Shown: positions 1 to 55,678 of the stretch, piece by piece
Position numbering within the stretch: the first letter of the stretch is position 1
Layout of the letters: each line of letters begins with the position of its first letter
Source: Macrostomum lignano
Taxonomy: Eukaryota
Reading direction: 5' to 3'
Assembly: GCA_002269645.1 (NCBI GenBank)
Contig: NIVC01000136.1
Coordinates: forward strand, 310,001-374,000
DNA length: 64,000 nt
Translations under genes and position numbers: made by a program
Notes under the pieces: generated by a model
What the model was told of the DNA's origin: nothing
The model's database searches: none
Seen by the model: only the letters and a program-made list of their open reading frames with translations

Positions 1-745
1 TGATGATTCTCTAGTGGGCTGATGTCGTTATAACGGATGGCAAGCTCAGTTCTAGCATTGATTTGGTAGGTGTTGTTGTAGCCCGGGTGGTCAAGGTCGT
101 GGCAAATCGCGGCCGTGATGAGGATGCCCAGATCCTCCTTGGGCAGCAGAGAGTCCAGGCCGCACAGGTGAATCATGCCGTACATCATTTGCGACACACA
201 GAAGCAGTGGCGAAAGTTGTGGAACGGGTTGTTCCGATAGTTGGCCTGGATGCACAGCTGTGTGTCGAATTATACTTTTGACTTTTAGCAACTCAGTAGC
301 AATTTTGATCGATTAAAAACTAAACAAAACGACTGAAAACTAAAGCCTAAACAAAAATTGATCACAAGATAGCTCGCTCTAGAATCCTCAATCCTTGTTC
401 TAAAAATAGCCTTCTTCAATAATTAGAGGGCATTGCGTTCTGAGTGAAGACGTCATTAGCTAACTTTTTGTGGAAGGCTAGACTGTTGAGCAGAAGACTT
501 ACCAGCCAGCGTTTCAGAGTCACCGGGTTCATGTTGAACTCTTGCAGCAGATCCAGCTCGTGATACATGTGCTCCAATAGACTGAGCATCTGAAAGAATT
601 GCGTGTACGGTTTTTAAATTATTAGTAAATTAGTGCGGCTTATGGTACAATCAGGTTTTTAAGCATCAGTTATCAAGCTTACTTCGTTTGGTTCCCAGTG
701 CCAATTATCGAACGTTGGCTTTTTAAGGTACTCGACTGTTCTCAT
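1..745 (-). CDS. PDE9: 5'-truncated duplicate of the PDE9-like gene (catalytic-domain exons; continues left of the window)
   Basis: 1-740 is identical by eye to 11687-12426 (offset 11686). Exons 683-745 ([21 protein letters not shown]), 503-589 ([29 protein letters not shown]) and <1-257 ([26 protein letters not shown]...[10 protein letters not shown]). The ATG at 745-743 lies in non-duplicated junction sequence. Expression is unknown. Confidence 0.8.
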
Positions 746-1828
746 TCTCGGCCGACTTTAGAATTACGAAGGAAGACCACATAGAGGAGACGAGCTCTAC
801 AGACCCGCCCGACAAAGAAGAGGAGCCCGCACCAGTAAGTGATCAATGAATTCTGTTCCCAGGCCTGAGGTCTGGAAGTGGGAGTTTACGAGTGACTGAT
901 CACCACTCTTTAACATTTCTTTAAGTTCAATCTTTGTAACAGTGAGTTCAATGCTGTTTATTAATTTTTTTATTACTAAAATACAATAGATATGGCTGGT
1001 TTTATTTAATAAAACATACAAATAATACGATAAACAATCACTATCGAGGGTCCAGACGAGCGCAGTTGCCTTGTTGCCATGCCTTCAAGAGGCCGACGGC
1101 GTCACCCTGATGACAGACTGAATAAGAGTCTGGCTGAGGAGGTACCAGCCGTTGAGGTTTTCTCATTATTGAGATTCTGACATGGGCGTAAAAGGGTGCA
1201 TTAAATACGCCGGCGCCCTTGGGAAGAATCCGAAAATCCGGAAAATTTGTTCGGGATGAGAGGAAAATCAGCGTTAGAAGTTTTAATTCTAAAACAACCC
1301 CGATATCTAAAGAAACCGGAACTATCAAGAATTACCTGTATTACCTGAATTATCTGGGCCAATGTACAAGATAATACGGCTTGCGCTGCAGATTGAAGAA
1401 ATCTAAAAAGACAAACTTTGACACAGTTCGCACTGCAGACGAAAAAAAACAAAACGCAAAACATTTTCGACACGACATGCAGTGTAAACAGAAACTCCTG
1501 CAGCGAGGCAGGTAAAATTGATGCGCTGCATGGCGCAAAGGCTGCGAGTGACGCATGCAGTGCCTCGGGATTCCAGACACTGTCTGGCAGAGATAAAAGT
1601 GCATTTAGTCGCGGGATTCTGGCCAACCGAATCCCCAGCTGAGGCAAACAGTCTGATGCAAATCCCAAACCGCGTGACGCGTCTGGAATGCAAAGTGCAG
1701 CCTGCAGTCACGTGAAATTTATCCGATAGGCAGGGAATGCTTCTTCTGTAAATAAATGCAGCCATTTTACAGAATGCAGCTGCAATCCTCAGCTTACCGA
1801 TACAACAACGAAAGGTGAACTTGACTCG

Positions 1829-4800
1829 ATGCAGCGCTTTCAGTTGCGAGTTTCTGCAGCGTTGGCTCTGCTGCTCTGCTCGCTGGCAGCCGGCCAGGTC
1901 TCCCAGTGCGCTCCCGCTGACTCTCCGCGGCTCCGCTTCGTGGCGCAGCTCAGCGTGAACGGCTGCGCGCTGTTCGTGCACGACACGGGAGCGAGCGACG
2001 GTCCGCACTTGGCAGTCGAGCCGCTCATGTGAGTGACGGACAGCCTGAGAGGCATTGTTCCCCGATTCGACTTCATCACCCAGCAGCTGTACTTCAGCGT
2101 TCCTGTATTGATGAGGGATGCTGGAATGCTCGCAGAGGCTCAGCGTCAACTGCGGCATCTGTCACCGAGGTCTGTGAGCTTCGCCACGGTGACCAACATC
2201 AGCGTCTTAGCCGACAACCGCTCATCGGTTCGGGTTTTGGGCTTCCTGTGGACTCCGGATGAGCCAGTAGCCACTCTGAGACTCGGCTTCAAAAGGATTG
2301 TTGTCAAGACCGATTCAAGTAAAGCTTCAGGTTCAAGAATTTTACAGGAAAGTTTACCTCTCCAGTTCTTTCAATCAGTGTATAACCAGCTGAAGCGCAG
2401 TGATGACTTTGGAAGCTCACCACAAGAGGCTCTTGAAAAGGTGAAGATATCAGCTTTTATCATTTCGAACGGATCTTGTCATGAGGTTCAGAGCCGCGTC
2501 ATGCTGCAAAACGACAGCTTCATCGAAGTCGGCTTGTACAGGAAAAAATTCTTACCCGTGTGCCGACAGCTGCGGTTCATTCGCTACGTCAAACTCGAGA
2601 ACTGCTCTGCCCGAGTGCACCAGAGACTCGACATCAAAGGCCACTTCCTCATCGAGCCTCTGCTGTGCCACAACATCTCCAGCTTGAGCAGCGAGTCAGT
2701 CAGGTATGACTACAGCCGAGACATGCACTACCTGAAGCTGGATCTGGTGCTGCAAGATGAGGCCACACGCGATGCTGTGAGGACTCAGTTGGCCGACTTG
2801 TCGCCTCGCTCGGTCGATTTCATGCGGCTGTGGACTGCTGAGAGATCGGTGAGCTCTTCGTTGAGTGCTCGGTTCGAGGTCGGTCCGCTGATGGCGTCGG
2901 CAGACTGGAGATCCGCTCAGCTGCGGCTGCTCTGCGGAACCTTGACGAAGTGCCGCGATCTCAGGTTGGTTGGAATTTTCTGAGGGGTTTTCAGCTTTTA
3001 TTGCACCAGATTCAAAAAAGAGTTTACTTTCTAGACTCTCTTTACTTCACAGGACTTCTTGAGTGTTTGCAAGAGTAATACAAAATCCCTTTTCGTGTCA
3101 GCTTGGTTGCTATTGAGCGATCAGATCAGGCTATCAATGCTTTTGTATTGGTTTTTTTTTTCTTTTTTAAATTTTTTTGGCGTTCAAAAATGGATTTGAC
3201 AATATCCAGGTCTGCTGTGCTGGCGGAGCCCGCTGACCTGTGGCGACACTTGCAGTGGCGGGTGACATCGCTGGTTGCTGAGCAGTGCATCTCCAAGTCC
3301 AGCCAAATCACTTCATCATGGAGAATGAAAGCGTCTGAAGGTGCAGTCAGCTGCTCCAGTCTGAAGTCCTGCGTCAGACTGCACAGCGCCTCTGCTCCAC
3401 GCACAGCGGCGTTTCAAATCCTGCCAGACGGTCGCTGCTTCGTGAAGTTTCAGCAGCGACTTACTGGCAGAGTGAGTTTCCAACGAAGCTGGACTGAGTA
3501 CGAGACTGGCTTCGGTGACAGCACTGACTTCTGGATTGGTGAGCGGCGTTTGTGTATCAGCTAATATTGTGTGACGGAGGGTTGGTAGCAGATCTTGTTA
3601 ATCTTATGGTGAAATTATGGTTGATTCATGCACTTTCAACTGACGTAATACGGACTGAAAGATTAACTGCCCGGCTAAATAAAAAAGTTAAGTTGAAATT
3701 GCGCCATGATGGCAATGGTCAACACTGGCCTTTTCCGCCTGATTGGCGTTTCGGGTCCTTATTTTTGGTCTTTGGTTTTTTATACAGCTAGGACTATCAA
3801 TGCCAAATAGTTTTTTTTCAGATGACTAAAATTTCATCCAGGACTCATCAATGAAAAGTATTTGACACTCCGTCCAGACAACGAAAATGTCGAAAAATGG
3901 AAGTCCCAAAGCTACTTTAAAGCATAAGGCAGTAGACAGCGGTTCAGTCCAGCCAGAGCAGCACCAGCCAGAGCAGCACCAGCCAGAGCAGCACCAGCCA
4001 GAGCAGCACCAGCCAGAGCAGCACCAGCCAGAGCAGCACCAGCCAGAGCAGCACCAGCCAGAGCAGCACCAGCCAGAGCAGCACCAGCCAGAGCAGCACC
4101 AGCCAGAGCAGCACCAGCCAGAGCAGCACCAGCCAGAGCAGCACCAGCCAGAGCAGCACCAGCCAGAGCAGCACCAGCCAGAGCAGCACCAGCTAGAGCA
4201 GCACCAGCCAGAGCAGCACCAGCCAGAGCAGCACCAGCCAGAGCAGCACCAGCCAGAGCAGCACCAGCCAGAGCAGCACCAGCCAGAGCAGCACCAGCCA
4301 GAGCAGCACCAGCCAGAGCAGCACCAGCTAGAGCAGCACCAGCCAGAGCAGCACCAGCCAGAGCAGCACCAGCCAGAGCAGCACCAGCCAGAGCAGCACC
4401 AGCCAGAGCAGCACCAGCCAGAGCAGCACCAGCCAGAGCAGCACCAGCCAGAGCAGCACCAGCCAGAGCAGCACCAGCTTCTACGAGTACAACCATCGTT
4501 GCAGTTTTTGCGTATATTTCTATGAAGTTTACATAAAAAACCTTGTTCCCCGACTCAAAACATTAGCTAGTAAATTTTGCGCTGTTCACGTCACGTATAA
4601 TATTAATGGCCTCATGAGGCCTTATGATAGGTACATGGCGTACTTAAGAAAGGTTAGAACTTATTGACTTATAAAAAAAATCCAAAAAAAATTCCTTTCG
4701 TGCGCGCCCTTCTACGAGAAATTTATCTGAGTCGCAGTCAAGTTTCCGAAGCGATGCATTCAGATGACATTTCGCTTCAGTCCTGGCCTGATACAATTAA

Positions 4801-5435
4801 AACCCGTCTTGAAGTCTCAGAACAGCCGGCCACTCATCTGGGATATCAGAAGACTTTGAATGGATAATTTAGTCAGTAAACGAATTTAGCTGCACCATCT
4901 GCTATGGAACGCACATTGTAAAAATATTATCTCAGGATCCAAATGACGAATCACCTGACAGCAGCGGCAACTAGCCGAGCAGAAGTGACTCAGACTCAGC
5001 CGCTCACCTCCCGCAGGTCTCTACGCCATCCACTCGCTCAGCCAGGGCGGCGCCACCCTCAGAGTGGAGATGAAGCTGTGGAACGGCTCTGAGCTGCATG
5101 CGGAGTACGCGGGATTCCAGGTGGGAGACGCCAGCACTGGGTATCGGATGACGTACCGAGAGATGCCGAGGGACAGGTTAAATGTCAGCTATGTCGCTTT
5201 GGAGAACAGCAAAGGCATGCGGTTCTCTACGATGGACAGGGACAATGACGTACACAGAGGAATCTCATGCTCAAACAGATAGGGAAAAGCAGGCTGGTGG
5301 TTTAATGCTTGTCTACACGTCAACCCTAACGGACTTTTTCCTTCGCGGGAGACAACAGATGGCAGCTATATCGTCTGGAACTCTGGCTCTGTCTGGCTGC
5401 TTCTTCGTGAAGTGCGGCTGATGCTGCAGATTTGA
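1829..5435 (+). pseudogene. Secreted fibrinogen-related domain (FReD) protein gene with two in-frame stops (probable pseudogene)
   Basis: join(1829-2964, 3210-3538, 5017-5435), phase-consistent GT-AG introns, 628 codons. Signal peptide MQRFQLRVSAALALLLCSLAAG. FReD motifs FQQRLTGRVSFQRSWTEYETGFGDSTDFWIG|LYAIH, FSTMDRDND and GWWFNAC...NPNG. In-frame TGA at 2030-2032 and TAG at 5280-5282. Confidence 0.85.
3947..4476 (+). repeat. 15-bp minisatellite (CCAGCCAGAGCAGCA)n, ~35 copies, in FReD intron 2
   Basis: Near-perfect tandem array; it generates the spurious (EQHQP)n, (AGAAL)n and (LVLLW)n ORFs. Confidence 0.97.
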
Positions 5436-5811
5436 GCATCAACAATTGAGCAACTCAGCGGCGCACTCTGTTGATTCAGATACTGATTTTCGGACTTATG
5501 CCAAACATTATTGGGAGACTAACAAGCCTGCTGCTGCTAATTATTACCTGCAAAACATGGATTATTACGTCTCCCTGATTGCAAGAGTTTTACTGACTGA
5601 AAACACTCGAGCGCATAAAAAGTGAAACCAATATTTATACACAATAAACTCATTTTAATAGACGCAAACTTTATTAATAAGCAAATTATAAAAGGCTGAA
5701 TACTTCAACTAAGAAATCTGAGCAGCTACTCACTTTATTCATACGGCCAAATGGTCGCGAATTTCTTTTTAAATTCACTTTTTACACTGGAATTTTAGTA
5801 ATGATTTTTTA

Positions 5812-6060
5812 TGAGCACCAGCCAGAGCAGCACCAGCCAGAGCAGCACCAGCCAGAGCAGCACCAGCCAGAGCAGCACCAGCCAGAGCAGCACCAGCCAG
5901 AGCAGCACCAGCCAGAGCAGCACCAGCCAGAGAAGCACCAGCCAGAGCAGCACCAGCCAGAGCAGCACCAGCCAGAGAAGCACCAGCCAGAGCAGCACCA
6001 GCCAGAGCAGCACCAGCCAGAGCAGCACCAGCCAGAGCAGCACCAGCCAGAGCAGCAGCA
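5812..6060 (+). repeat. Second copy of the 15-bp minisatellite, ~16 copies
   Basis: Same unit as 3947-4476, with a few GAGAAG variants. Confidence 0.95.
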
Positions 6061-6199
6061 GTCGTGGCAGCACCGGCCGACTCAGTTCTTCAGCTGATGC
6101 TTGCAACTGACTGACTCATAAATTAATTTTGTCTTAGACTTCTCCTTACTTCTTCTTTACCTTAGATTTTTTCATTTAGTCAAGTTTGCGAACAGAAGT

Positions 6200-6740
6200 A
6201 TTTAGATGACATTTCGCTTCAGTACTGACCTGATACAATTAAAAACCCGTCTTGCAATCTCGGAACAGCCGGCCGCTCAGCTGGGATATCGGAAGGCTTA
6301 AAATGGATAGTTTAGGCAATTAACAAATTTTAATTTAGGCAATCCAGGTAGGAGACGCCAGCACTGGGTATCGGATGACGTACCGAGAGATGCTGAGGGA
6401 CAGGTCAAGTGTCAGCTGGGATGCTTTGGAGCTCAGCAAAGACATGCGGTTCTCCACGATGGACAGGGACAATGACGTATGGGATGCTGGTTCATGCTCC
6501 AATAAATATGGAAAAGGAGGCTGGTGGCTTTAACGCTGCCATCAATTCAACCCTAACTGACTTTATCCTTCAGGGGATTTAGCACATCACAGGAATACGG
6601 TCAGGCACTCTGGCTCTGCCTATCGAACTTTTCGTGAAATGAGGCTGATGCTGCAGAGTTGAGAATCAAAAATTGAGCAACTCGTTGGCGCACTCTGTTG
6701 ATTCAAATACAGATTTTTCGGATTAATGCTAAAACAAGCT
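6200..6740 (+). pseudogene. Decayed partial duplicate of FReD intron 2 plus last exon
   Basis: 6200-6320 matches 4760-4880. 6345-6662 encodes QVGDASTGYRMTYREMLRDRSS...FSTMDRDNDVWDAGSCSNKYGKGGWW, followed by a frameshift (CTT TAA) and a TGA in place of GGA. Confidence 0.85.
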
Positions 6741-6984
6741 GTTGAAAGCCGCGGATTTTGAACCCAGGGAATTTTTCAATCCCAGGAACTATTTTTGCAT
6801 GTATTCTTAAATCTGAGGCCATACTCAAACAAAACTTGTTAATAGTTATTAGGATAGAGGTAAACAAAATGGAGTCCATTCGTATAAAATTTGAATTTGA
6901 GGCAAATATTGATATTGTTGGTTGGGCTTAAAATATTAAGATAATTGAATTAAGATACTAATTCATGCTCATACAGATGGCGCA

Positions 6985-7345
6985 TAGGAGGCTGGTGGCT
7001 TAGAGACTGCCGTCAAACCAACCTAACGGACTTTCTCCTTTGCCAGGGCCAGCAGATATGGCTGGCACTCTGGCTTTGTCTGGCTGTCTCTTCGTGCAGT
7101 GCGGCTGATGCTGCAGATTTGAGCAGCAAAAATTGAGCAACTCAGTAACGCACTCTGTTGACTCAAATATGGTTTTTTCTCGGATAACTGCCAGACATTA
7201 AGTACGACTAATACTTTTGCAAATTATGAGTCACATATTATCGATTTTTTCGATATCTTTCTGATTGCAAGAGTTTTACCTACTGAAAATAGTCGAGCGC
7301 ATAAAGAAACTGAAAACAATATTTTTCGTGATTTTTAACTCAATA
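6985..7345 (+). pseudogene. Third fragment of the FReD 3' end and 3' flank
   Basis: GGAGGCTGGTGG...CGGCTGATGCTGCAGATTTGA, with flanks matching 5434-5660. Confidence 0.75.
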
Positions 7346-8483
7346 AAATCATATTTTCAACCATAAGCTAATTCAAAAAAGTAAAACATCCAAATAAACA
7401 AACGTTTTTCGTAAGTCTCAGCCAGTTTAAAAATTTTACACTCGAATTTTCCACGAATTTAAAAACAAACCAAAAGCCTCAATGCTTTGTTGCTACGGAG
7501 CGCATGAGGCTTTTTTGAAGTGTTGCTTTTCTGATAGAATTTGATCGATTTTCTGGTTTTTTTGCTTCTTGCCAATGAGGCACGCAGACTCATTTTTTTG
7601 TATTCACAGCTTTATCGATAATCAATAAATAATCAATAATCAATAAATAATAATCAATAATCAATATTCAATAGTATATAATAATCAATAGTATATATAA
7701 TCAATAAAGAATTGAACCAGATTGAAGTGCGGAAAAGTGCTTTTATTGTTGGTGATGTGCAGGATCAAAAAATACCACCAATCAATTTTAATTTATTTGC
7801 GTTGACATATTTGCTATTGTCATGAGCGCTACTCAATGCCTGTCTACTGCATCTGGTCTCATATGCATTCTACGAACTTACAAAAGTAAAATGTACTATT
7901 TAAATTCTGAGCTGTAGATTTCACTTTAAATTATAGTGTCAAAATAGAAGATTGCAATAAAGCATACGGTAGGTAAACATAAACATGGTGTGGAGTCCAG
8001 GACTAATGTGCTCTATATACAAACTTATCGTCATTTTTCCAGTGCTGGAATGTTGGAGCCGGTGGGTAGGTTTTTACTTGAACTAATTGTAATTCGGTAA
8101 AGTGTATAATAGTCTTCACCAGACATACATGGTAAAACAAAATCGCACAACAGTTCTACTGTAAAGTGCAGATGAAGCAAGTTCAGTTCAGCTTCGTCTC
8201 GCTTCGAACCGCTCGTGAGCAGTAAAATTCGCAGAAAAATTTCACTTTTCTTCAGCTGTTTGCTGCTGTTCCTGCAAGTTGGGAATAAATTTGATTTAAA
8301 ATTAGATTAATAAGGAATCTTACTACATATATCAGCTTGTCGCTTTTATAACATATTTTACAGCTGGATGTGTCAAGGCCGAAATCTGCACAGTGGAAGG
8401 ACTAAATGTTTAATTTCATGGAAATATGAAAATGACGACTGTTCTTACCTTTTTTAACGTGGTTTGGAACAAAAGGGAGCCGG

Positions 8484-9053
<570 letters not shown>

Positions 9054-9373
9054 TACAAGTCGTCTTAAATTAAATAAACTGCAATTCAAGCGGTAAAACT
9101 GCGAAAGCGGCCCCTATGTGCTTCAAAATCTGTTCAAGTGAAAGATGGAGCAGACTCCACAGCTGCCTCTATCAAAGCTTCATGGCATCGGCATGCATTG
9201 GGTGCAGGAAAATCGGTCCTGGTTACAAATCATAAGCGGCTATACAACACAGACACAAATCAGCCTATGAAGATCATTTAAACGTCTCTACCAGGTGTAG
9301 TGTTGAAATTTTGGCTCTGAATCACAACTGATTGCTGCTATCGACTAAAGAGTAGCTAAATGAAATAGCAAAC

Positions 9374-9448
9374 CTGTTTCAGCTTCTCGTAGTGGTCAAG
9401 AGAACTCTTCAGTGGCGTCACCATGACTTCCGTGATGCGAGGGAACGG
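9374..9448 (-). CDS. PDE9: Alternative (duplicated) PDE9 exon B: PFPRITEVMVTPLKSSLDHYEKLKQ
   Basis: tacatttggcag acceptor, 75 nt (phase 0 to 0), GT donor (gtttgc). Homologous to exon A at 9986 ([26 protein letters not shown]). Confidence 0.7.
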
Positions 9449-9698
9449 CTGCCAAATGTACGTAGTTATTTAATAGTGTGACAGCCGGGTTGCGTTGCAC
9501 AGTATTCATGAAAATGTAAATAAAAATCTTTACGAGTACTTTTCTACGTAGAGACTACTCAAAAAGACGGTGCACTTTCAAACCGTGAACATTCACTGAC
9601 TGTTGCTGCTCCACGAGGTACATACTAATCGGCTTCGGTTTTCTTGAATATTTATCTTGGGAAATAATCATCTATGCTTGTTTTGACGTTTAAACGTT

Positions 9699-12600
9699 TC
9701 ATTTACCTACTGCACAGTAGAGCAAAGCAAGTTCTAACAGAAAGGAAAGCGGTAACATTGGGATGATCAGCTTTGAAACTTCACATGAGTCATTTTTCAA
9801 AGCTCTATGATTTTGATAGTCCTTCCACTGTTGATTCGGCCAGTCTGCTAGCAAATAAACTGTTTCAAAACCCTTCGGCTGTCTTGCCTGCTTTCGTCTG
9901 GCTTCCTCTTGCTCTTTGAGTGTCTCGTACTTGTGCAGAGAGGATTTCAGCTGCTGCACCATGGAGTCCGAGAGCGCGGGGAAGAGCTGATGAGTGCGAC
10001 AGGAGTTGGATGGGTGCTCAGACGTCAGACACTGTCGTTGAACTGAGATGGCCTTATGTAGCTGAGGTCAGTACTGACATCATTTCTGTCTATGAGCTTC
10101 ATATTCACTAATCCTCTCAACAGATATCCAACCCATCCCTTTTGATTTCAAGTCTTAAGTCATAGAAGGTTTGTGTTCTTTGTATCGGGTTGTATCCTAA
10201 TGGTTAGACTCAGAAAAATTTGTGCCTAGCATTATCAGCATTAGCTGGAGTAATTACGAGTGTGTCTGGCGACCCTCCAGTCATTGGACTGAACAGCCGT
10301 ACGCAGCGCAGATGCACCGCGCAAGCGTTTCGGCTGAGCTGTCGGTTGCCCATATGCACACTGAGCAGGTGTAGTACTAGTAATTCAATCAACAATTATT
10401 TGACTATAAGAAAGGAAGAACAACGCTTTTGTTTAAACTGGCTACAGTTTGTGAAGTGAGAACAAAACAGCCGCAGTTGATACAAATGAATGTTAAGTTT
10501 TGTGTCTTTCATGTCGCCTTATCCCTTATCCGACTGCAGTGCAAGCTACATGCAGGGTACCAAAATTATAATGACCTCACCGTATCTCAGCCTCACCTTA
10601 GCAACCGCCTCAAACATTGGAATGAGTACGAATCGGATGAAACCAATCTGAGCTGTTGGCTTTGTCACCTTCTCTCGGTCCATGAAGGGGGCCACGGGTA
10701 GGCCTTCGATTTTTTCTCGATCCGACTGATGTCAAAAAATGTTTTGAAACGTTGGTGCAGTGACTTTCTACTCATGGTTACGTATAGTAGTATGTTTCAC
10801 TCGCAAAGTGGCTGGCTGATTAATTGAACTAACCTGATTAAAATACTCCTCCAGCAAGCAGTCGACCCATGGCTCGCTGACCTCCATTGGGCGAACTTCA
10901 TTGGAGATGTCGCAGCACTTGATCAGCACCATTTTCAGCTGCGAAAATGCAGAATAGCTGTGATACATAAATGCGACTGGAAGTCCTATGAACTCTGTCT
11001 AAACTAAAATCTGAATGCAGCGTGAACTCACCGTGTCCAAGTGATCCTTCTTGGAGAAATCGAAGCCCTCCTCAGTGCGCTTCTTGAAGTTCTCCAGGAT
11101 CTCAGCGTGTCGAGCCATGTCGGTGGCCAGAATCAGCATCGTCATGCCCTGGGCATTAATTGATAAAGACAGTTAGTCAGTTCGCTCGGGGGCTGTAGTG
11201 TGGGCAGTCAGTCGGCAGTCTATCCGTAGGCAGTGCAAGCAGTTACGCCATGGCACGCGCCCACACTGGGTGTACAGACGCCTTGATTTTCTCTATTTTC
11301 AGACACGTTCACACGTACACTCTCTGTGTTTGGAGGCTTGGCTTTCACGTTAATTTTGCAACAAGTTACAGGCCAATTTAATCAAATTTTACTTAAAAAA
11401 TAAATTCATTCGAAAGTAAACAAGGGCCGCTTGATAAATACTCGTATTATTGTAAACTTGCATCCACACTCCTCTCAAGAGTTCGCCTCTTGATTTGGCC
11501 ATCACGAGCACGAGTCGAGGATTCCCTAGGATTACAGCTTTTTTAATTATTTAGAAACTTTTGTTTTACCAAGAGAGATAACAATAGCTTGTACTAACCT
11601 TGCGAATACGCTGAAAGGCCTCCTTGTCTACATTGGCGAATATATTGGTCTCCGGATTGTTGAGTATCTGGAAAGCCACAGCGCAGTGATGATTCTCTAG
11701 TGGGCTGATGTCGTTATAACGGATGGCAAGCTCAGTTCTAGCATTGATTTGGTAGGTGTTGTTGTAGCCCGGGTGGTCAAGGTCGTGGCAAATCGCGGCC
11801 GTGATGAGGATGCCCAGATCCTCCTTGGGCAGCAGAGAGTCCAGGCCGCACAGGTGAATCATGCCGTACATCATTTGCGACACACAGAAGCAGTGGCGAA
11901 AGTTGTGGAACGGGTTGTTCCGATAGTTGGCCTGGATGCACAGCTGTGTGTCGAATTATACTTTTGACTTTTAGCAACTCAGTAGCAATTTTGATCGATT
12001 AAAAACTAAACAAAACGACTGAAAACTAAAGCCTAAACAAAAATTGATCACAAGATAGCTCGCTCTAGAATCCTCAATCCTTGTTCTAAAAATAGCCTTC
12101 TTCAATAATTAGAGGGCATTGCGTTCTGAGTGAAGACGTCATTAGCTAACTTTTTGTGGAAGGCTAGACTGTTGAGCAGAAGACTTACCAGCCAGCGTTT
12201 CAGAGTCACCGGGTTCATGTTGAACTCTTGCAGCAGATCCAGCTCGTGATACATGTGCTCCAATAGACTGAGCATCTGAAAGAATTGCGTGTACGGTTTT
12301 TAAATTATTAGTAAATTAGTGCGGCTTATGGTACAATCAGGTTTTTAAGCATCAGTTATCAAGCTTACTTCGTTTGGTTCCCAGTGCCAATTATCGAACG
12401 TTGGCTTTTTAAGGTACTCGACTGTTTCTTGCGACAAAATGTACTGAAATCGATTAGAAATTCATGGAGTTTGTTTAGAAATGTTTCAAAAGAAGCAGGG
12501 GGCTGTGTGCACCCATAAGCAAAATTGTCACACAACCGGCGAGAAGCATCACTACACAGACTCCCCTGAGCAGGCACACAAGCGCGCGGATACGTACTCA

Positions 12601-15410
12601 CAGGCACACTCACAGGGGCCCTAAATTTATTTATAGTTAGGCATGTACACTTCCCTGTGACTTGGGGGTGAGCCCTCAAATTAAGCCTAGCCGAACAAAG
12701 CCACGCCGAGATTCCAATTTAGCCCTAAATTAATGTGACTGCATTTGGTATGGGGCCTGGGATGCTGGGACTTCTGCACTGCACTTTTAGATTCTCTAAA
12801 AGATATTTGTACAGCTGCTGAGCCTCAAACCTTTTGAAAAGCCGGCACACGCTTCATGCTAACAAATTTGATTCCATTGTCCGCCGTCAAAACAATATCC
12901 TCGCTGTCTTGCGATGACATTGGAACCCTGCAATTGAATTTTTTTTTAAATTGGCTTAACCCTAGGTTTCTATGACAACGGCATGAAGGAAACATGATAG
13001 ATTCATCAAGTTGATTCCATTAAGTCTAAGTAGAGCTAAATGTAAGGCATTCAAGATTTAGTGAGTCGCACCGACTCAGCCAGAATTACAATGCGTATTT
13101 ACACGCCCTAGCAAGCATCGAATTTAGCAGCAAGTCGTAAAAAAAGAGCAGAGCTCGAGAAATCAAGCTCGTGAGACTTTATCCACCTGTAGCATCGATA
13201 TTCTTTAGAATTCTTTAGTTATTCGCGACGAGAACTGAGTACTATTCCGTGCCTCTCCTTGATCAGTTGCCGCCAGGGACGAGCAGAGCCTTGGACTCTA
13301 AGTGCGACTATCCGACCAACTCATGCCAAAGAAGCCATCTCAGTCGAAATTCCCGGCGGGTTCAGATGAGGAGACCAGTCTAGCGAACTACATTGAGAAC
13401 TAGCGCGGACTTCCTTACTTTCTTGTTTCTCAAGTTGATTTAGTAAGATTTCACAGTACGTGGCCACTTCATTTAACTACACGTACTGGTGCCACACAAG
13501 CGTGCAATGAGATAATGGATGCACCAAACAAGAACATTTTGTTTGTCTACTGAAGGCAAACATTGAAACAACACAATTTTGAAATTGAAAAAAGGTAACG
13601 GCTCGTATCATACACTCGAAAATAATTACTCTGCTCTTGTTTACTTTGCCATCTGTCTCCCCCGCTAAAAACTTGAGTCCTCACTTCAGTTCCAGTTCCC
13701 TTTACTCAGCTTTGCAGTAAACCTGATGCACTTTTTCTCTCTCTCAATCCAGACAAAACCGACTCACAGCTTTGAGCCGGTTTCAGACGCCTGGCTCAGC
13801 TTCTTGCCCTGCTGCCAGACTTGGTCGCGGACTTCGCTGATCTCCTTCTTGCAGCGCTCGATTTCCACAAGTTTCAGCGATTCGCCTGAAAAGTTTTCGG
13901 CGATTCTAGATTATATATGTGTGTAGATGTTATGCATTTTCACCAGACTTGTACGGTGGTAAGAAACTCACTTTCAAGTCTCTTCTCAATTATATTGAGC
14001 CGTTTGTCCAGTTCAGTTCTGAACTCCTCCATGCGAAAAGCTCTGAAATGCGCACCGGTTTAACGATTTTGTTTAAATCTCATTCGGACCGACGATAGAA
14101 ATAAATCAAAGTGAATTCCTGCCTGTTAAACTGCTCTCCAACTTTGCTGAGCACCAGGCTCAGAGCTTGCACCTCGGTATCTCCGGAGTCGCCAGCTTTC
14201 GTTACGTTGACGCGGTAAGCCGAGCTGAAAGCGGTTACAGAAATTATTAATTTTTTTTAGAGTCAGAGGGGTTGTGTGCACCCTGGCGCACTTTAAGCGA
14301 CATAAGCACACAACCGGCGAGAGGCATTACTGCCCATTCCGCCGACTCCCCTGAGCAGGCATACAAGCGCGCGGATACGTACGCAGGCACACACTCACAC
14401 AGGAGTGTACAGCGGCCCTAACTTTATATTATCGTTAGGCATGTACACTTCACTGCGCCTCGGGGGTTGGCTCTCAAGGCCGTTAATTGCACGAGCAGAG
14501 CCAAGCCGAGATTCCAATTCAGTCCCAAATTAATTTGACTGCACTTGGAATCGAGCCTGGGTCGCTGGCACACCAGAGCAGCTGCGCTACCGCTGGGCTA
14601 CGGCCCCCCAGCGGTTACAGCAAGCTTTTAAAGTTCCTATGCAACAGTTTTACTCTTAAACCCATTAGCCTGTCATTCCTTACTCAGTTGTGTTCTGCGG
14701 CATGTCTGGCACAATGGGCACGTGACCACCTTCGGAAGTTTTGAGAACAATTTGCGAGCTGCGCTTCACTTGGGCCACCTGACAAATCAGGTCGTGAATG
14801 TCCTGCGACGAGCAGTGCGGGCTGAATACGATCTGAAATAGTGAGTAGTGGACGGAACTGAATAACGTGCTTTGAGCATATACACCGGGTTCATAACAAT
14901 AAGTGGTTCGTGGGTGTGGTCGTGGTTCAGATGAAAAGTACTATTAAGCCATAGCATCAGATAATTGGCTCCAATCGCGAGCTCATTAAGCCCAGCTGGA
15001 CAATTGTTTACGGTCTATAAATTTAGCATTTCATCTGAGTGATCATCCGAAAAATATTTACCTCACCTGTGCAGTTTTTGCAGGACTTAATTATTTTATG
15101 ATCCGAAAGAAGCAATCCAACCCTGCTGACCCAATCTAATTTTAGCCAGCATTTTTATGCCTATCAATTATCTGAAGTTCTCGAAAGCACCCCCCTCCCA
15201 TCTGGTTGCATTAACAGCGCCGCAGCTGAGGCCATGTTTTGCTGCCGATGTGATGAAATAGTTACCCATACGTTCGTATATCGATATGTTTTTGTAAGCA
15301 GCTATAGGCTCGACATGCGCTATAAAACAGCCGCTGAATGAACTCACCGACTCTGTTTTGCCGTTCACGCTCAAGAATATCGATCTCGACGTAGCCACTC
15401 CGTTGCCCAT
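9699..15410 (-). CDS. PDE9: cGMP-specific phosphodiesterase 9 (PDE9A-like), complete gene
   Basis: Exons (-): 15348-15410 ([21 protein letters not shown]), 14684-14832, 14123-14224, 13972-14042 ([23 protein letters not shown]), 13768-13885 ([13 protein letters not shown]), 12831-12927, 12369-12443 ([25 protein letters not shown]), 12189-12275, 11599-11943 ([13 protein letters not shown]; [34 protein letters not shown]), 11032-11148 ([10 protein letters not shown]), 10834-10938 ([13 protein letters not shown]), 10597-10725 ([30 protein letters not shown]), 9699-9986. All phases are consistent and the motifs are typical of the PDE9 family. The 3' end is uncertain. Confidence 0.95.
12490..12785 (-). 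mobile_element. SINE copy (diverged head) in a PDE9 intron
   Basis: Colinear similarity to 14255-14608 (shared CACAACCGGCGAGA, GACTCCCCTGAGCAGGCA, GCGCGGATACGTAC, TTAGGCATGTACACTTC, GCCGAGATTCCAATT). Confidence 0.7.
14255..14608 (-). mobile_element. tRNA-derived SINE
   Basis: Minus-strand 5' end GGGGCCGTAGCCCAGCGGTAGCGCAG...GGCTCGATTCC has Pol III A-box- and B-box-like motifs; A-rich 3' end; second copy at 12.5 kb. Confidence 0.7.
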
Positions 15411-16577
15411 GACCGATGAGATGAGAATTTTTAGACAAAGCTTAAATAAAATTGAACACTTGTTTAATCGATTTGTATGTTTGAGTACTTCGAGAAACCC
15501 TGAGCAGCTGCTGTGTCGCTTGACCGTCGGAAAACTGGATTCTCGATTCCCATAGGGGTGTTTTTATAGGTAGAGCTCACCTCGGCTATGGGGCAGCTCG
15601 GATTGGGCCAGGCGATGATGACGGCGGAACTGAGAGCGGAGAATAGGAAAGTAGAAGGGATTTGAGACCGAGGGAAAGAGGGTAATGGGGAAGCGGCCGG
15701 ACTGCCTGCCGGGTATTTCATTAGCGCCGGCCTGTTCCTCTCTGTAAACGGATTATTCCCTCCTCATACACCTGCTTTCCCACCTGGAGTCCAATTGACT
15801 CGCGAACTTGGTCTGGATAGAAAATTTGGGAAACGGAGGCCGCTGGGGAGAGGGGGGTTTCTGCTAGGCAGTCATCTAAAACAGAAGAATACGAGCAGCA
15901 GGAAGGACAGCGTGTTGTCGCACCTTCGCAAGTTTTTTGTCGAGCTTAGATGAAGATGTTCCTCTCTGTTTCTCTGTCCCATATGTAGGTAGACTTTCCA
16001 GGCTTTTCTTTGCAGTAAAGTTGCCAATTTATTTCGCTAGCTTTCGAATTAGCTTGGAACGCACGTTCAAGGCGCGTGCACAAAACGCGTATAGCTATAC
16101 ATGTAGCTCTGCGACATCGATGCAAACGAAATACAGATAATTAAAAGAACTTGCTCTGCTAGTCTAATAACCCTGCCTTTGATGCTTTCACTGGTTCTGC
16201 GACAACTGCAACGTCCGACGGTAGCAAAGGATTGATCAATTTTATGGGAGATGCTGCTTAAGAGTCTTATCTAGGTTTTTACTGGCTATTTCGTACATGC
16301 AAGAGCTGTGCATTTACAACTTTATTCGTTCATTGCATGAAAAATGGTACAAAAATTGCTTTCTAGCAGGAAAAAGAAGATAAACAGCTGATCTTTAGCC
16401 GTGAAGCGGATTTATCTCGCTAACTATCCTCTATTCTTAGAGACAGAACAAAGACAAAGACAGAGCAAACCGACTGACCCTCGTGCTCGCGATCCCGTGG
16501 TTCGATTCCGTGTGTCATTTATTTATTTATTGCATTCATTAATAGCTTCTGCACGCAAAATTTAGCTGGTGGATTGT

Positions 16578-20761: not shown

Positions 20762-22468
20762 TGAGGGTTGTTCGGAAAGTTCATGGACAAACATGAACTA
20801 TTGTTAAACAAGCAACAAAACTGAAAACCTTAGTCATCGACCTTCTCAATGTATGTGCCCTTGAGGCACACACACTTGTGCCAATGCTCTGGTAGCTTTT
20901 TAATCTTTGTAGCAAAGAATTCTTTAGGGGTATTTCTGACCCACTGGCTGACAGCAGAGGCTAGGGCCTGTACACTGCCATAATGGTGACCCCGGAGTGA
21001 CTCCTTCATCCGCCCAAACAGCCAGTAGTTGCTCGGTGCTAGGTCTGGTGAGTAGGGTGGGTGCAGTAGCAGCTTGAAGTCCAGGCTAGAGATGGCAGCC
21101 ATTGTTGCTTGGCTAGTATGGGGCCTGGCGTTGTCCTGCTGCAGCAGGATCCCCCTGGTCAGCTTGCCCTGGCACTTAGTCTTGATGGCTTAGTGCAACT
21201 TCTCTAGCATTTAGATGTAATAAGCATTGGTAATGGTAGTGCCACATGGAAGCCAGTCAATAAGCAGGATACTCTCCTTGTCCTAGAAGATGGTGGTCAT
21301 CTGCTTTCTAGCCAATGGTGCAGCCAGGGCCTTCACTGGGGTGGGTTCTCTAGCTGCCTTCTAGACACTGCTTTGCATCTTCAACTCTGGCTCACTGTAG
21401 TGAATCCACAAGTAGTAGGTTGGATGGGGTTGAAATCTTTGGGTGGGATCGGGATCGGGAATAATTTTTTTCTCGGGATTGGGATTCGGGAATCAGGATC
21501 AGGTCTTTTAGTGTATTGTCCATGTAAAGTTAAAAAAAATTGAGAAAAGATTGTCAAGATCAAGAAGTAAAACACAACAAAATTGATATAAAGTTTTGTA
21601 ACCAACAAAGTAAATAATGTAACAAGTTCAAGTTAAAGCAAAATACCTTCAAGTAATTACTAATTCTATAAATTTTTAATTGAAAGACTTGTTCCCGAAT
21701 CTCAAGTTTTTTAGGGTCAGGATTCTGGTCCTGCAGGAATTCAATTTTCCTCGGGATCCCGAGATTTTGGGATTGGGATCGGGATCCCGTCCAACCTCTA
21801 TCCACGAGTCATCCCCAGTCACAATTTGATCCAAAAAGTTTGGGTCATTGTAGTAGGCCTGCAGGAGCTGCTGACATGCACAGACCCGCCCGTGCTGCTG
21901 ATTATCTATTAGAAGCTTTGGGACCCAATGAGCAACAACTCATGACATCCCAAGCTTGGCCGTGAGAATTTCGTGAACTGCTGTGGGTGATATACCCACA
22001 GTCTGCCAGTTCATGCACAGTGATCCGGCGGTCAACATCAAGTGCCTGAAGCATGTGCTTAATGTTGAACATGTTGACCGTGGTAGCTGGCCTTCCATTG
22101 CATGGCAGATCTTCGACTGTCTCCTAGCCGTCCTCAAATCGCTGCACCCACTTGCTGACCATTGACTTCAAAGGGGCATCTTCACCATATGCTGCATGCA
22201 ACTTGCAAACAAAGTTGGCCTGTTGCTTTCCTTCCTTCCATAAAAACCAAATTATGCTTCGCTTGGCTTCTTTGTTTTTTTCCATAGTGCCAAAAATAGT
22301 GGGTAACTTAAAATGACTGACTGTACAAAATAAAATAAGCATATTTGATCACATTACCATTAAAAGTTGTGGGACATAAGTGCTGTCTATGGTCTAAAGT
22401 ATGGTGACTTAACTGTCTTTGTTTGGAAAAAATATAAGTTTGTCTACAAACTTTCCAAAAAACCCTTG
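20762..22468 (-). mobile_element. Decayed mariner (Tc1/mariner) DNA transposon
   Basis: TA target-site duplications (20760-61, 22469-70) and imperfect TIRs (TGAGGGTTGTTCGGAAAGTTCATGGACAAAC vs CAAGGGTTTTTTGGAAAGTTTGTAGACAAAC). Transposase remnant 22285-20830 with WVPKLL, VTGDDSW, LQQDNARPH and HPPYSPDLAPSNYWLF; multiple stops and frameshifts. Confidence 0.93.
21413..21800. mobile_element. hAT-type MITE nested in the mariner transposase
   Basis: 8-bp TSD TCCACAAG (21405-12) / TCCACGAG (21801-08); imperfect TIRs TAGTAGGTTGGATGGG vs TAGAGGTTGGACGGG; internal GGGATC subterminal repeats; non-coding. Confidence 0.8.
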
Positions 22469-25500: not shown

Positions 25501-26727
25501 CGAGCTGGCTAGGAATAAGAGGCTTAATCGGGACAGTCAGGAAGCCTATCTTCAAGATAGGGAGCAGGGAGCTCATGGTTGGTGCTGTTTTGAGCAGTTG
25601 CTGTCTTGCTCTCATGGGCAAGAGGGTGGGATTCAGTCTGTGTGTGTTTAGGGGATGGGATTCAGCCTGTGTGTGTTTAGGGGATGGGATTCAGCCTGTG
25701 TGTGTTTAGGGGATGGGATTCAGCCTGTCTGTGTGTGTTTAAGGGATGGGATTAAGTCTGTGTGTGTTTAGAGGATGGGATTCAGTCTGTGTGTGTTTAG
25801 GGGATGGGATTCAGTCTGTGTGTGTTTAGGGGATGGGATTCAGTCTGTGTGTGTTTAGGGGATGGAATTCAGTCTGTGTGTGTTTAGGGGATGGGATTCA
25901 GTCTGTGTGTGTTTAGGGGATGGGATTCAGTCTGTGTGTGTTTAGGGGGTGGGATTCAGTCTGTGTGTGTTTAGGGGATGGGATTCAGTCTGTGTGTGTT
26001 TAGGGGATGGGATTCAGTCTGTGTGTGTGTTTAGGGGATGGGATTCAGTCTGTGTGTGTGTTTAGGGGATGGGATTCAGTCTGTGTGTGTGTTTAGGGGT
26101 GGGATTCAGTCTGTGTGTGTGTTTAGGGGATGAGATTCAGTCTGTGTGTGTGTTTAGGGGATGGGATTCAGTCTGTGTGTGTTTAGGGGATGGGATTCAG
26201 TCTGTGTGTGTTTAGGGGATGGGATTCAGTCTGTGTGTGTTTAGGGGATGGGATTCAGCCTGTGTGTGTGTGTTTAGGGGATGGGATTCAGCCTGTGTGT
26301 GTGTTTAGGGGATGGGATTCAGCCTGTGTGTGTGTTTAGGGGATGGGATTCAGCCTGTGTGTGTTTAGGGGATGCGATTCAGTCTGTGTGTTTAGGGGAT
26401 GGGATTCAGCCTGTGTGTGTGTGTGTTTAGGGGATGGGATTCAGCCTGTGTGTGTGTGTGTGTGTGTGTTTAGGGAATGGGATTCAGCCTGTGTGTGTTT
26501 AGGGGATGGGATTCAGCCTGTGTGTATGTTCAGAGAATGGGATTCATTTTATTTTTAACACCAGACTGCATTTTCCCCAACGCCGCACCAACACAGGTGG
26601 AGAGTGGCACCGCGTGGCCATTCTGTGCGACCTCGCCGCTAACTCTGGTGCCGCCGCCAGGCCGTCGCTGCCGGCAAAAGACGTGAGCAGGATGCGCGGA
26701 ATTCTCGGCCGGTTGGGTGCCGAGTAG
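22501..26727 (+). CDS. CLC: Clathrin light chain-like protein (short N-terminus)
   Basis: Exons 25341-25577 (EAVQQWRAQFEAKISEK...WLRNHEDELARNKRLNRDSQEAYL) and 26597-26727 (GGEWHRVAILCDL...AKDVSRMRGIL) match the CLC heavy-chain-binding helix and the C-terminal WERVARLCD...KDVSRMR motif. A putative upstream exon 22501-22543 (MDDKQNGVADQGVK, phase 1) is less certain; the alternative start is the ATG at 25334. Confidence 0.85.
24727..24907. repeat. ~67-bp-arm imperfect inverted repeat centred on AGTCACGTGACT
   Basis: Arms 24727-24793 and 24839-24907 are reverse complements (GCCGTTTCTATTGGCAACA / TGTTGCCAATAGAAACGGC). Confidence 0.85.
25627..26545 (+). repeat. ~29-bp minisatellite (GGGATTCAGTCTGTGTGTGTTTAGGGGAT)n filling a CLC intron
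   Basis: About 30 copies with a variable internal (TG)n. Confidence 0.97.
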
Positions 26728-33900: not shown

Positions 33901-34678
33901 AGGATGTCATGTAAAAATGAAATGCAGCTATAATGCTGTGCTGGGAAGAAAAACTGAGACGTAAAGGCTCTCAGAGAATAACTGAGATTACGAGGGGGGT
34001 TGTTTCTGGGATCTCAAAGCAAAAGTCAGAAGCTACTTCAAAGTTCATGTACTTTACTCAATTTTTTATTGCATTCTTTGTTGGCTCGCCATTGGGGGGG
34101 GGTGCTGATAGAAGAAGAGTCATGTAAAAAATAAAAGTAGCACTATGTATACATAAAAGACAAGTCATGTCGAAGTTAAAAGATTCATTTGGGAATTGCT
34201 ACGATGTCAAAGCTTGGTGGAAATCGTTATAGTGCTGTGATTCTTAAAGAAGGAATCACTAAAATGTCAAGGCTTAGGGGAGAAGAATTGCTGAGATTTC
34301 AAGGCTTTAGGTTGGGTTAAAGTTAGGTTTAGGTCAGGTGTGGGTTGAGGGTTATATTTTATCGGGTTTCAAGGTTAACAGTGGATTTTTTAGATTTCAA
34401 GGTTTATGGGGGCCATCGCTGACATGTCAAGGCTTACGGACGGGGGGGGGGAATAGCTGAGATGTCAAGGCTCACGGGGGTATAAATGAGATTTCAAGGC
34501 TAAAGTCAGAAGCTACATGTAGTTTATTGAAAACTTTTTATTACATTATTTGATGCCTCCTCAGGCGAGGGATCGCTGATAAAAAAAGCGTTATGTAAAA
34601 AATAAAAGAAGCTTATCGCTATAATGCTGTAGTAGTGCTATAATGACTCTTAGAGAGAATTACTGAAATTTCAATGCT

Positions 34679-34711
34679 TTAGGGTTAGGTTAGGGTTAGG
34701 GTTAGGGTTAG
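34679..34711 (+). repeat. Interstitial telomeric repeat (TTAGGG)~5 inside Helitron copy 2
   Basis: Same position within the element as 29797-29864. Confidence 0.9.

Positions 34712-35092: not shown

Positions 35093-55678
<20,586 letters not shown>

What the first reader, a model, noticed from the sequence alone, without database searches (positions are those of the whole stretch)
683..760. Duplication breakpoint inside a PDE9 exon creates a new in-frame ATG, giving a ready-made catalytic-domain-only PDE9
Seen: 1-740 equals 11687-12426, and the identity stops inside the exon encoding [25 protein letters not shown]. On the minus strand the parent reads CAA GAA ACA GTC GAG (Q-E-T-V-E). The duplicate reads ATG AGA ACA GTC GAG (M-R-T-V-E, ATG at 745-743), in frame with an intact donor at 682 and the downstream exons. 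Known: this segment marks the start of the PDE9 catalytic domain, so the copy would lose the N-terminus (Gly2, regulatory and coiled-coil region) but start at the catalytic domain. Inference: this could be a nascent gene. It sits head-to-head with the FReD gene (ATG 1829), whose upstream region could act as a bidirectional promoter.
Basis: partly seen in the sequence, partly recalled or inferred. Interest (0 to 1): 0.7.

Follow-up and report, generated by a model that had tools for sequence, protein, structure and literature searches.

The report
Truncated PDE9 copy, young tandem duplication
A very recent head-to-tail duplication of about 11.7 kb in the flatworm Macrostomum lignano left an extra copy of the PDE9 gene without its first 203 codons; it could encode the catalytic domain alone, but nothing shows it is expressed, and such partial copies are ordinary in this repeat-rich polyploid genome.

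Summary
Window 1-740 is identical at all 740 bases to 11687-12426. Identity stops 17 nt inside a 75-nt PDE9 exon, and an in-frame ATG (745-743, minus strand) sits two codons upstream of the break.

The organism is Macrostomum lignano, a neopolyploid flatworm with a difficult genome assembly. A homeologous locus from assembly Mlig_3_7 (L001, about 97.7% identical) is collinear with the window from base 740/741 onward and has no second PDE9 copy. It therefore shows the unduplicated state. The junction is a tail-to-head join with at most 1 bp of microhomology and no repeat at either breakpoint.

A deposited 1104-aa gene model (P0242) reads through parent PDE9, antisense FReD and the second copy. 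It shows that the copy carries catalytic exons A'-F' and G1' left of the window.

The "nascent gene" reading is not supported.
- An open in-frame ATG arises at about one random junction in four in this window.
- The copy has no splice acceptor and no known promoter.
- The neighbouring "FReD gene" is a pseudogene with two nonsense substitutions.
- Thirteen upstream ATGs lie between it and the junction ATG.
- The copy looks like a mosaic of homeolog types, so assembly expansion remains a real rival.

Interest is low to moderate.

The parts
1..740 (-). Right end of the duplicate (left) copy of the PDE9 3' part. It holds exon C' (257-1, cut by the window edge), exon B' (589-503) and the 3' 58 nt of exon A' (740-683), with both introns.
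   Evidence: 740/740 identical to 11687-12426. Exon mapping by tblastn and splice sites.
740..741 (.). Tail-to-head duplication junction. The end of the unit (equivalent to 12426) is joined to the start of the unit (741).
   Evidence: Identity to the parent stops here. Homology to the unduplicated homeolog L001 starts here, at L001 8971 = window 740. At most 1 bp of microhomology.
743..745 (-). In-frame ATG supplied by the non-duplicated flank. It would start M-R-T-V-E-Y-L..., a 316-codon ORF if the downstream exons are as in the parent.
   Evidence: Chance expectation 24-27%.
677..682 (-). Intact donor (GTAAGC) of truncated exon A'.
   Evidence: Identical to the parent donor.
741..1828 (.). 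Start of the duplicated unit: 1,088 bp upstream of the FReD ATG. On the minus strand it would be the 5' flank of the truncated PDE9. It holds 13 ATGs and shows no CpG-island-like signal.
   Evidence: Collinear with L001 8972 onward.
1829..5435 (+). Fibrinogen-related (FReD) pseudogene, head-to-head with the truncated PDE9. Premature stops at 2030-2032 and 5280-5282.
   Evidence: Pfam Fibrinogen_C on the exon translations. Paralogs and the homeolog read straight through both stops.
8243..15410 (-). Parent PDE9 gene. The complete 517-codon model runs MGNG...EQQQTAEEK*. Exons: 1 15410-15348; N2 14832-14684; N2b 14224-14132; N3 14042-13972; N4 13885-13768; N5 12927-12831; A 12443-12369; B 12275-12189; C 11943-11599; D 11148-11032; E 10938-10834; F 10725-10597; G2 9448-9374 (alternative G1 9986-9888); H 8271-8243.
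   Evidence: Matches the deposited models P0121, P0241 and P0242.
11687..12426 (-). Parental segment identical to 1-740. It is the right end of the duplicated unit.
12427..12443 (-). The 17 nt of exon A (TACATTTTGTCGCAAGA) that, together with the acceptor upstream of it, the duplicate lacks.

Best explanation
This is a very young head-to-tail (tandem) duplication of an 11,686-bp unit (window 741-12426) in one subgenome of Macrostomum lignano. It was made by non-homologous joining, with at most 1 bp of microhomology.

The unit runs from 1,088 bp upstream of a FReD pseudogene, through that pseudogene and the convergently oriented 3' three-fifths of PDE9, to a point 17 nt inside PDE9 exon A. The right-hand copy is continuous with the rest of PDE9 and leaves one intact 517-codon gene. 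The left-hand copy is a 5'-truncated PDE9 that lacks codons 1-203, its promoter and the acceptor of its first retained exon.

The flank happens to supply an in-frame ATG, so the copy has an open 316-codon frame covering the whole catalytic domain. Most likely it is a silent by-product of the duplication, that is, a partial duplicate on its way to being a pseudogene, and not a working gene.

Shown: the junction, the identity of the two copies, the unduplicated homeolog, the exon content of the copy as far as G1', and the open frame. Inferred: that the whole 11.7-kb unit is present twice, that the junction exists in the animal, and that the copy is silent.
For: - 740/740 identity with an abrupt end.
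- The junction has tandem-duplication topology: the end of the unit is joined to its start, in the same orientation.
- The homeologous locus L001 (NIVC01003286.1, 97.6-97.8% identical over about 15 kb) is collinear from window 740/741 rightward. It holds one PDE9 only, and 8,970 bp of unrelated sequence lie to the left of the breakpoint equivalent.
- There is no N, repeat or transposon end at either breakpoint. The nearest LTR in L001 ends 557 bp away.
- The copy matches its in-window parent at all 5 sites (3 substitutions, 2 indels) where the homeolog differs, so near the junction it belongs to the same subgenome as the parent.
- The deposited model P0242 runs parent PDE9 -> antisense FReD -> second catalytic domain. 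All its window-mapped exons are 100% identical to the window, and exons A'-F' of the second copy are identical in protein to the parent.
- The locus has a history of local duplication: extra partial FReD exons at 6339-6530 and 6954-7133, and two arrays of the same 15-bp minisatellite.
- For silence: no acceptor; 13 upstream ATGs; the neighbour is a pseudogene; no separate model of the copy among the listed hits; the ATG is a 1-in-4 chance event.
Against: - The sequence left of the window is not visible. Only about 2.6 kb of the left copy is documented, through P0242, which stops abruptly although the frame continues. That probably marks a contig end in the older ML2 assembly.
- The G1' exon of the copy carries the homeolog's two residues (T, S), not the window parent's (S, P). 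In the assembly the left copy is therefore a mosaic. M. lignano assemblies are documented to contain chimeric scaffolds (36% of assembly length) and wrongly expanded or collapsed variants (PMC10733133; REAPR figures in PMC5730564).
- No reads and no expression data could be examined. Silence is inferred from absent evidence, in a species where even the parent PDE9 has no model in the NCBI annotation of the homeologous locus.
Confidence: 0.6

Rival explanations
1. Assembly artefact. The extra copy does not exist in the animal. Reads from homeologous copies of the locus (subgenomes S, L1, L2, about 2% apart) or a chimeric read were laid out one after the other, giving a false, locally expanded duplication in a noisy-long-read assembly.
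For: - The left copy is a mosaic: window type at 1-740 but homeolog (L001) type at both diagnostic residues of G1'.
- The only older model of the copy ends abruptly about 2.6 kb from the junction, as at a contig end.
- Perfect identity of the two copies is what consensus polishing of a false duplication would give.
Against: - The junction joins two unrelated sequences with at most 1 bp of overlap. Overlap-based assemblers need a read containing such a join.
- A random ligation chimera would very rarely join two points 11.7 kb apart at one locus, in the same orientation, to give exact tandem-duplication topology.
- There is no N in the whole window.
- Near the junction the copy is not homeolog type: 0 of 5 diagnostic differences.
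- The arrangement is present both in the window and in the sequence from which P0242 was predicted. It is not known whether these are two assemblies or one.
Confidence: 0.28
2. Nascent gene. The duplication is real and the truncated copy is transcribed and translated from the junction ATG into a catalytic-domain-only PDE9. Transcription would come from divergent activity of the FReD upstream region, from read-through, or with spliced-leader trans-splicing.
For: - The open frame runs from ATG 745 through exons identical to the parent.
- The product covers human PDE9A 191-494 and begins 4 residues inside a construct that crystallises.
- The ATG has A at -3.
- About 30-39% of M. lignano genes are SL trans-spliced, which lowers the need for a well-formed 5' end (PMC8629364, PMC5730564).
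Against: - No transcript evidence of any kind.
- The ATG is expected by chance in about 25% of junctions.
- There are 13 upstream ATGs if transcription starts near the FReD promoter.
- The FReD neighbour is a pseudogene.
- The retained exon has no acceptor. The AG sites near the junction (ACAG|TCGAG, TAAAG|TCGG) do not fit the reported trans-splice motif [T/C]TNCAG, and the ATG that ends the spliced leader would be out of frame at both (read from the sequence against the motif given in PMC8629364).
- The upstream same-strand gene (the parent PDE9) ends about 7.5 kb away, far beyond the 1-kb operon spacing.
- With zero divergence there has been no time for selection to show.
Confidence: 0.06
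3. The junction is real but is not a simple full-length tandem duplication. It could be a shorter segment beginning at 741 inserted into exon A of another homeolog's PDE9, which would disrupt that copy and add nothing. It could also be an extrachromosomal circle of the 11.7-kb segment whose reads were threaded into the chromosome path.
For: - Only the junction and about 2.6 kb to its left are documented.
- The mosaic pattern of the left copy would fit a junction that belongs to a different homeolog from the right-hand sequence.
Against: A simple tandem duplication explains the same facts with one event. Nothing seen requires more.
Confidence: 0.06

Closest known systems
Partial (5'-truncated) tandem gene duplicates, as catalogued among young duplicates in Caenorhabditis elegans and Drosophila (own knowledge: Katju and Lynch 2003; Zhou et al. 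2008; Rogers et al. 2009)
   Same: Head-to-tail copy of a few to tens of kb. The breakpoints ignore gene boundaries. The join is by microhomology or blunt ends. One copy of the cut gene stays intact and the other lacks its 5' end and promoter. Divergence is near zero.
   Different: Here the event sits in a neopolyploid genome with three homeologous copies of the locus. One of them serves as the unduplicated reference, but they also make assembly error a serious alternative. By chance the truncated copy keeps a complete, open catalytic-domain frame with its own ATG.
False duplications in genome assemblies of heterozygous or polyploid organisms (own knowledge: Kelley and Salzberg 2010; Ko et al. 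2022; for this species PMC10733133)
   Same: Near-identical adjacent copies in a genome with about 2% diverged homeologous sequence. Mosaic of variant types in one copy. Apparent gene gain.
   Different: The junction is a clean non-homologous join without a gap, and the junction-proximal 740 bp are of the same variant type as the neighbour. Both are unusual for a layout artefact.
N-terminally shortened PDE isoforms and catalytic-domain constructs of human PDE9A (PDB 2hd1, 3dy8, 8bpy; own knowledge: PDE9A has many 5' splice variants and residues 181-506 are active in vitro)
   Same: The predicted product begins at the equivalent of human residue 190/191 and keeps the whole PDEase_I domain, including the HNFRH, HDLDHPG, ATDMARH and AQIGF motifs.
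   Different: Those isoforms arise from one gene by alternative promoters or splicing and are known to be expressed. Here the shortening is genomic and expression is unknown.

Membership tests
PDE9 (class I cyclic-nucleotide phosphodiesterase, PDE9A orthologue) | PDEase_I catalytic domain above Pfam's threshold | tested here: met
   PF00233, 292.5 bits against a cut-off of 24.8, residues 62-291 of the truncated product.
PDE9 (class I cyclic-nucleotide phosphodiesterase, PDE9A orthologue) | Closer to PDE9A than to any other PDE family | tested here: met
   Human PDE9A chains score E about 3e-157. The best non-PDE9 chains (PDE4, PDE2 and others) score about 2e-48. All close database relatives that carry a name are named PDE9A.
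PDE9 (class I cyclic-nucleotide phosphodiesterase, PDE9A orthologue) | Metal-binding His/Asp motifs and the invariant glutamine of the nucleotide pocket | tested here: met
   [23 protein letters not shown] and TAQIGFI are identical to human PDE9A in the printed alignment. The roles of these residues come from my own knowledge of PDE structures.
PDE9 (class I cyclic-nucleotide phosphodiesterase, PDE9A orthologue) | cGMP hydrolysis | not testable with these tools
   Needs an enzyme assay.
Tandem segmental duplication | Tail-to-head junction with both copies in the same orientation | tested here: met
   Window 740 (equivalent to 12426) is followed by 741, the first base of the unit. Offset 11,686.
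Tandem segmental duplication | A homologous locus without the junction (empty site) | tested here: met
   L001 is collinear from 740/741 on, has a single PDE9, and has unrelated sequence to the left.
Tandem segmental duplication | The whole unit is present twice | tested here: inconclusive
   The window shows 740 bp of the left copy. P0242 extends it to exon G1', about 2.6 kb. The remaining roughly 9 kb lie outside the window and could not be fetched.
Tandem segmental duplication | Support from reads and read depth in the organism | not testable with these tools
   No access to reads.
New gene born by partial duplication | Intact open reading frame with a start codon and splice sites | tested here: met
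   ATG 745-743, donor 682-677, exons B' and C' identical to the parent. Exons D'-F' are identical in protein according to P0242.
New gene born by partial duplication | Its own transcription start, or another documented route to a mature mRNA | not testable with these tools
   No transcript data. Indirect signs are negative: no acceptor, 13 upstream ATGs, pseudogene neighbour, no separate model among the listed hits.
New gene born by partial duplication | Evidence of selection or persistence (divergence with constraint, presence in other lines or species) | tested here: not met
   0 differences in 740 bp, so there is nothing to measure. The homeologous locus lacks the copy.
False duplication (assembly artefact) | Gap, contig edge or repeat at the junction | tested here: not met
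   No N in the window, and unique sequence on both sides of the junction.
False duplication (assembly artefact) | The copies differ as alternative haplotypes or homeologs do | tested here: inconclusive
   Not near the junction: 0 of 5 diagnostic sites. Yes at G1': 2 of 2 diagnostic residues are homeolog type.

The most novel reading that the evidence does not exclude
The duplication is real and the truncated copy is transcribed, either from divergent activity of the decaying FReD promoter or after spliced-leader trans-splicing. It would then give a free catalytic-domain-only PDE9 lacking the Gly2 N-terminus and the coiled-coil region. That would be a gene caught at birth, essentially at zero divergence, in a neopolyploid flatworm where transgenesis and knock-down are available to test it.
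Probability: 0.05. Interest if true: 0.55.

Novelty: new member of a known kind. Interest (0 to 1): 0.22.

Why it matters
If real, this is a well-defined example of how a non-homologous tandem duplication cuts a gene and leaves a partial copy. Both breakpoints are resolved to the base, and an unduplicated homeolog serves as reference. That is useful as a marker for copy-number variation among M. lignano lines and for checking assembly quality at this locus.

It also corrects two database items. The 1104-aa 'PDE9' protein with two catalytic domains (P0242) is a read-through artefact. The FReD gene here is a pseudogene.

It does not open a new question about PDE9 or gene birth unless expression is shown.

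Tried and rejected
1. Fetching the DNA left of the window. The look-up of encoding contigs on the window's own deposited models P0121 and P0242 found nothing on record. The NCBI annotation has no PDE9 model at the homeologous locus to anchor on.

2. Unequal crossing-over between repeats. Rejected: there is no similarity between the two breakpoints beyond 1 bp, and no repeat at either.

3. Transposon-mediated origin. Rejected: in L001 the nearest element (LTR pair 4632-4879 / 8154-8413) ends 557 bp from the breakpoint.

4. That 741-848 is the coding 3' end of an upstream plus-strand gene (ORF ...[35 protein letters not shown]). Rejected: the homeolog has a stop four codons upstream of the breakpoint equivalent, and the 35-aa tail gave no database hit.

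5. A 69-nt intron to remove the in-frame TGA at 2030 in FReD. Rejected: the homeolog and all paralogs read through without a gap and have TGC there.

6. That P0121 was an allele proving a third variant. It is simply the L001-type homeolog.

7. Spliced-leader rescue. The nearby AG sites do not fit the reported motif, and the leader's terminal ATG would be out of frame (together with the sequence).

8. CpG-island signal in 741-1828: none.

9. The first homolog search, with a 168-aa query, returned only proteins under 300 aa and missed the species' own models. The 307-aa query found them.

Full report
**Observation.** Window 1-740 equals 11687-12426 at every base, and the match ends abruptly at 741/12427. 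No other long exact repeat at a distance exists in the window. The remaining repeats are minisatellites, microsatellites and one 77-96% segmental repeat. On the minus strand the parental sequence is the 75-nt exon ...tttcag|TAC ATT TTG TCG CAA GAA ACA GTC GAG...AAC GAA|gtaagc ([25 protein letters not shown]; 12443-12369). The copy keeps the last 58 nt, preceded by ...TAA TTC TAA AGT CGG CCG AGA ATG AGA.

**The gene.** Homologs map a complete PDE9 gene on the minus strand from 15410 to 8243. It has fourteen exons and 517 codons, running MGNGVATS...EQQQTAEEK*. All exons from A onward are in phase 0. The break falls after codon 203. The hypothetical product of the copy (MR + residues 204-517, 316 aa) has a full PDEase_I domain (292 bits). 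It aligns to human PDE9A residues 191-494 at E about 1e-157, against about 1e-48 for other PDE families, and starts four residues inside the shortest crystallised construct. The "catalytic-domain-only" description is therefore accurate as a reading of the frame.

**Organism and deposited models.** A search with the 307-aa product found the window's own PDE9 models. The cluster holds P0121 (471 aa), P0241 (448 aa) and P0242 (1104 aa). The FReD neighbour's relatives are all from Macrostomum lignano, which identifies the species.

P0242 runs through the parent PDE9 (skipping its true stop at 8243-8245 by using a GT inside the last codons). It continues through antisense open frames of the FReD region (5138 to 1799) and into a second catalytic domain beginning VEYLKKPTF. 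Every P0242 exon that maps inside the window is 100% identical to it. P0242 is thus an artefactual fusion model. It does prove that, in the sequence it was predicted from, the left copy continues beyond the window edge with exons C', D', E', F' and G1'. Exons A'-F' (279 aa) are identical in protein to the parent.

**The unduplicated reference.** P0266, a FReD protein 95-97% identical to the window's, led to L001, which is NIVC01003286.1:32287-55531 of assembly Mlig_3_7. L001 matches the window from 740 to 15738 at 97.6-97.8%, in the same order (FReD, then PDE9 on the opposite strand). This level fits the 1.9-2.4% SNP divergence reported between the S, L1 and L2 subgenomes of this neopolyploid (PMC10733133), so L001 is a homeolog.

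Homology begins exactly at L001 8971 = window 740/741. The 8,970 bp to the left in L001 hold an LTR retroelement (4632-8413) and 557 bp of unique sequence, with no PDE9 exon. L001 therefore shows the state before duplication.

The three sequences at the breakpoints are as follows.
- Left flank: ...gttgttacgct|ctcattctcgg
- Right boundary: ...cgactgtt|tcttgcgac
- Junction: ...cgactgtt|ctcattctcgg

This is a tail-to-head join with at most 1 bp of microhomology and no repeat or transposon end. It is the signature of a non-homologous tandem duplication of the unit 741-12426 (11,686 bp).

**Real or artefact.**

Evidence for a real event:
- Such a join needs reads that contain it.
- A random chimera would hardly link two points 11.7 kb apart at one locus in direct orientation.
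- There is no gap.
- The copy agrees with its neighbour, not with the homeolog, at all five sites that distinguish them within 1-740.
- The arrangement is present in the window and in the sequence behind P0242.

Evidence against:
- The G1' exon of the copy in P0242 has the homeolog's residues (LFPALTDS...ARQSKG) and not the window parent's (LFPALSDS...ARQPKG). The left copy is therefore a mosaic.
- P0242 ends at ...ETVYL although the frame continues in both types, as if a contig ended about 2.6 kb left of the junction.
- The published assessments of these assemblies are poor. ML2 has 32% error-free bases and Mlig_3_7 has 64%. There are 180 Mb of duplicated blocks at least 95% identical (PMC5730564). 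36% of assembly length lies in chimeric scaffolds, and expanded or collapsed variants occur (PMC10733133).

A reading that fits everything is a real duplication in one subgenome, with the assembly path switching between homeologs left of the junction. I put a real duplication at about 0.65-0.7 in total and a pure artefact at about 0.28.

**Is it a nascent gene?**
- The ATG is not evidence. In this window 24-27% of arbitrary junctions have an in-frame ATG before the first stop, and Met 229 (MLSLLEH) would be available anyway.
- The copy has lost the acceptor of its first exon and everything upstream of it.
- The proposed promoter donor, FReD, is a pseudogene in this copy. Compared with L001 it has TGC>TGA at 2030-2032 and TGG>TAG at 5280-5282, where all paralogs have sense codons.
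- Its ATG is 1,084 nt from the junction ATG. The minus strand in between contains 13 ATGs and shows no CpG-island-like signal.
- M. lignano trans-splices about 30-39% of its genes, which could in principle rescue a promoterless 5' end. However, the AG sites near the junction do not fit the reported [T/C]TNCAG motif, the leader's terminal ATG would be out of frame, and the nearest upstream same-strand gene ends about 7.5 kb away, against a 1-kb operon spacing.
- No separate model of the copy appears among the listed database hits.
- Expression could not be tested directly. The species' transcripts are not in the searchable protein collection at this locus: the cluster holds only three UniRef models.

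**Verdict.** The functional interpretation is possible but unsupported. The most likely status is a very young, silent, 5'-truncated partial duplicate, or an assembly expansion, in a genome full of near-identical duplicated blocks. This is a known kind of feature. Interest is low to moderate.

Noticed in passing
window 2030-2032 and 5280-5282 (+): The FReD gene next to the junction carries two nonsense substitutions relative to its homeolog (TGC>TGA, TGG>TAG). All paralogs read through both positions, so this copy is a pseudogene unless both are base errors.
   Followed up: yes
window 9986-9888 and 9448-9374 (-): PDE9 has two similar, consecutive phase-0 versions of the exon after the catalytic core: G1 ([33 protein letters not shown]) and G2 (PFPRITEVMVTPLKSSLDHYEKLKQ). 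They look like a duplicated exon, possibly used in a mutually exclusive way. The homeolog has both.
   Followed up: partly
P0242 (UniRef, 1104 aa), mapped to window 14223-1799 and 736-1: A deposited 'protein' with two PDE9 catalytic domains is a read-through artefact. It skips the true stop at 8243-8245 and strings together antisense open frames of the FReD pseudogene.
   Followed up: yes
window 3949-4478, 5814-6061, 6339-6530, 6954-7133: Two arrays of the same 15-bp minisatellite (CCAGCCAGAGCAGCA; 35 and 16.5 copies, 97-99% matches), followed by extra partial copies of the last FReD exon (about 81% and 76% identical at DNA level to the L001 FReD last-exon region). These are older local duplications within the same unit.
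   Followed up: partly
window 16.5-56 kb: More than 25 separate mini- and microsatellite arrays (periods 4-72 bp, up to 1.7 kb each) fill much of the window. This fits the 15% simple and tandem repeat content reported for this genome.
   Followed up: partly
window 28151-30086 vs 31895-34933: A segmental repeat of about 2 kb (77-99% identical in pieces) contains short TTAGGG runs (29797-29864, 34679-34711) and a 22-23-bp minisatellite that is greatly expanded in the second copy.
   Followed up: no
window 20833-22348 (-): Remnants of a mariner/Tc1-type transposase (HTH_48 and DDE_3 matches), broken across frames.
   Followed up: partly
window 25313-25648 (+); 38577-38948 (+): An isolated exon with a clathrin light chain match, and another with a weak FERM_C match. 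The genes they belong to were not modelled.
   Followed up: no
window 57902-64000 (-): Two very long overlapping open frames (699 and more than 1,265 codons) in a region of 50-61% G+C. One has a ubiquitin-family match and the other is low-complexity with no family match. This is probably one large gene that runs off the window.
   Followed up: partly
L001 4632-8413: An LTR retrotransposon (260-bp LTRs 94% identical, with gag/protease/RT/integrase frames on the minus strand) lies upstream of the homeologous locus. More retroelement frames lie further left (676-3052).
   Followed up: partly
window 9701-10154 vs L001 17251-17710: The stretch around exon G1 is twice as diverged between the homeologs (4.4% substitutions) as the rest of the locus (1.6-2.3%). 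It is the place where the left copy switches variant type.
   Followed up: partly
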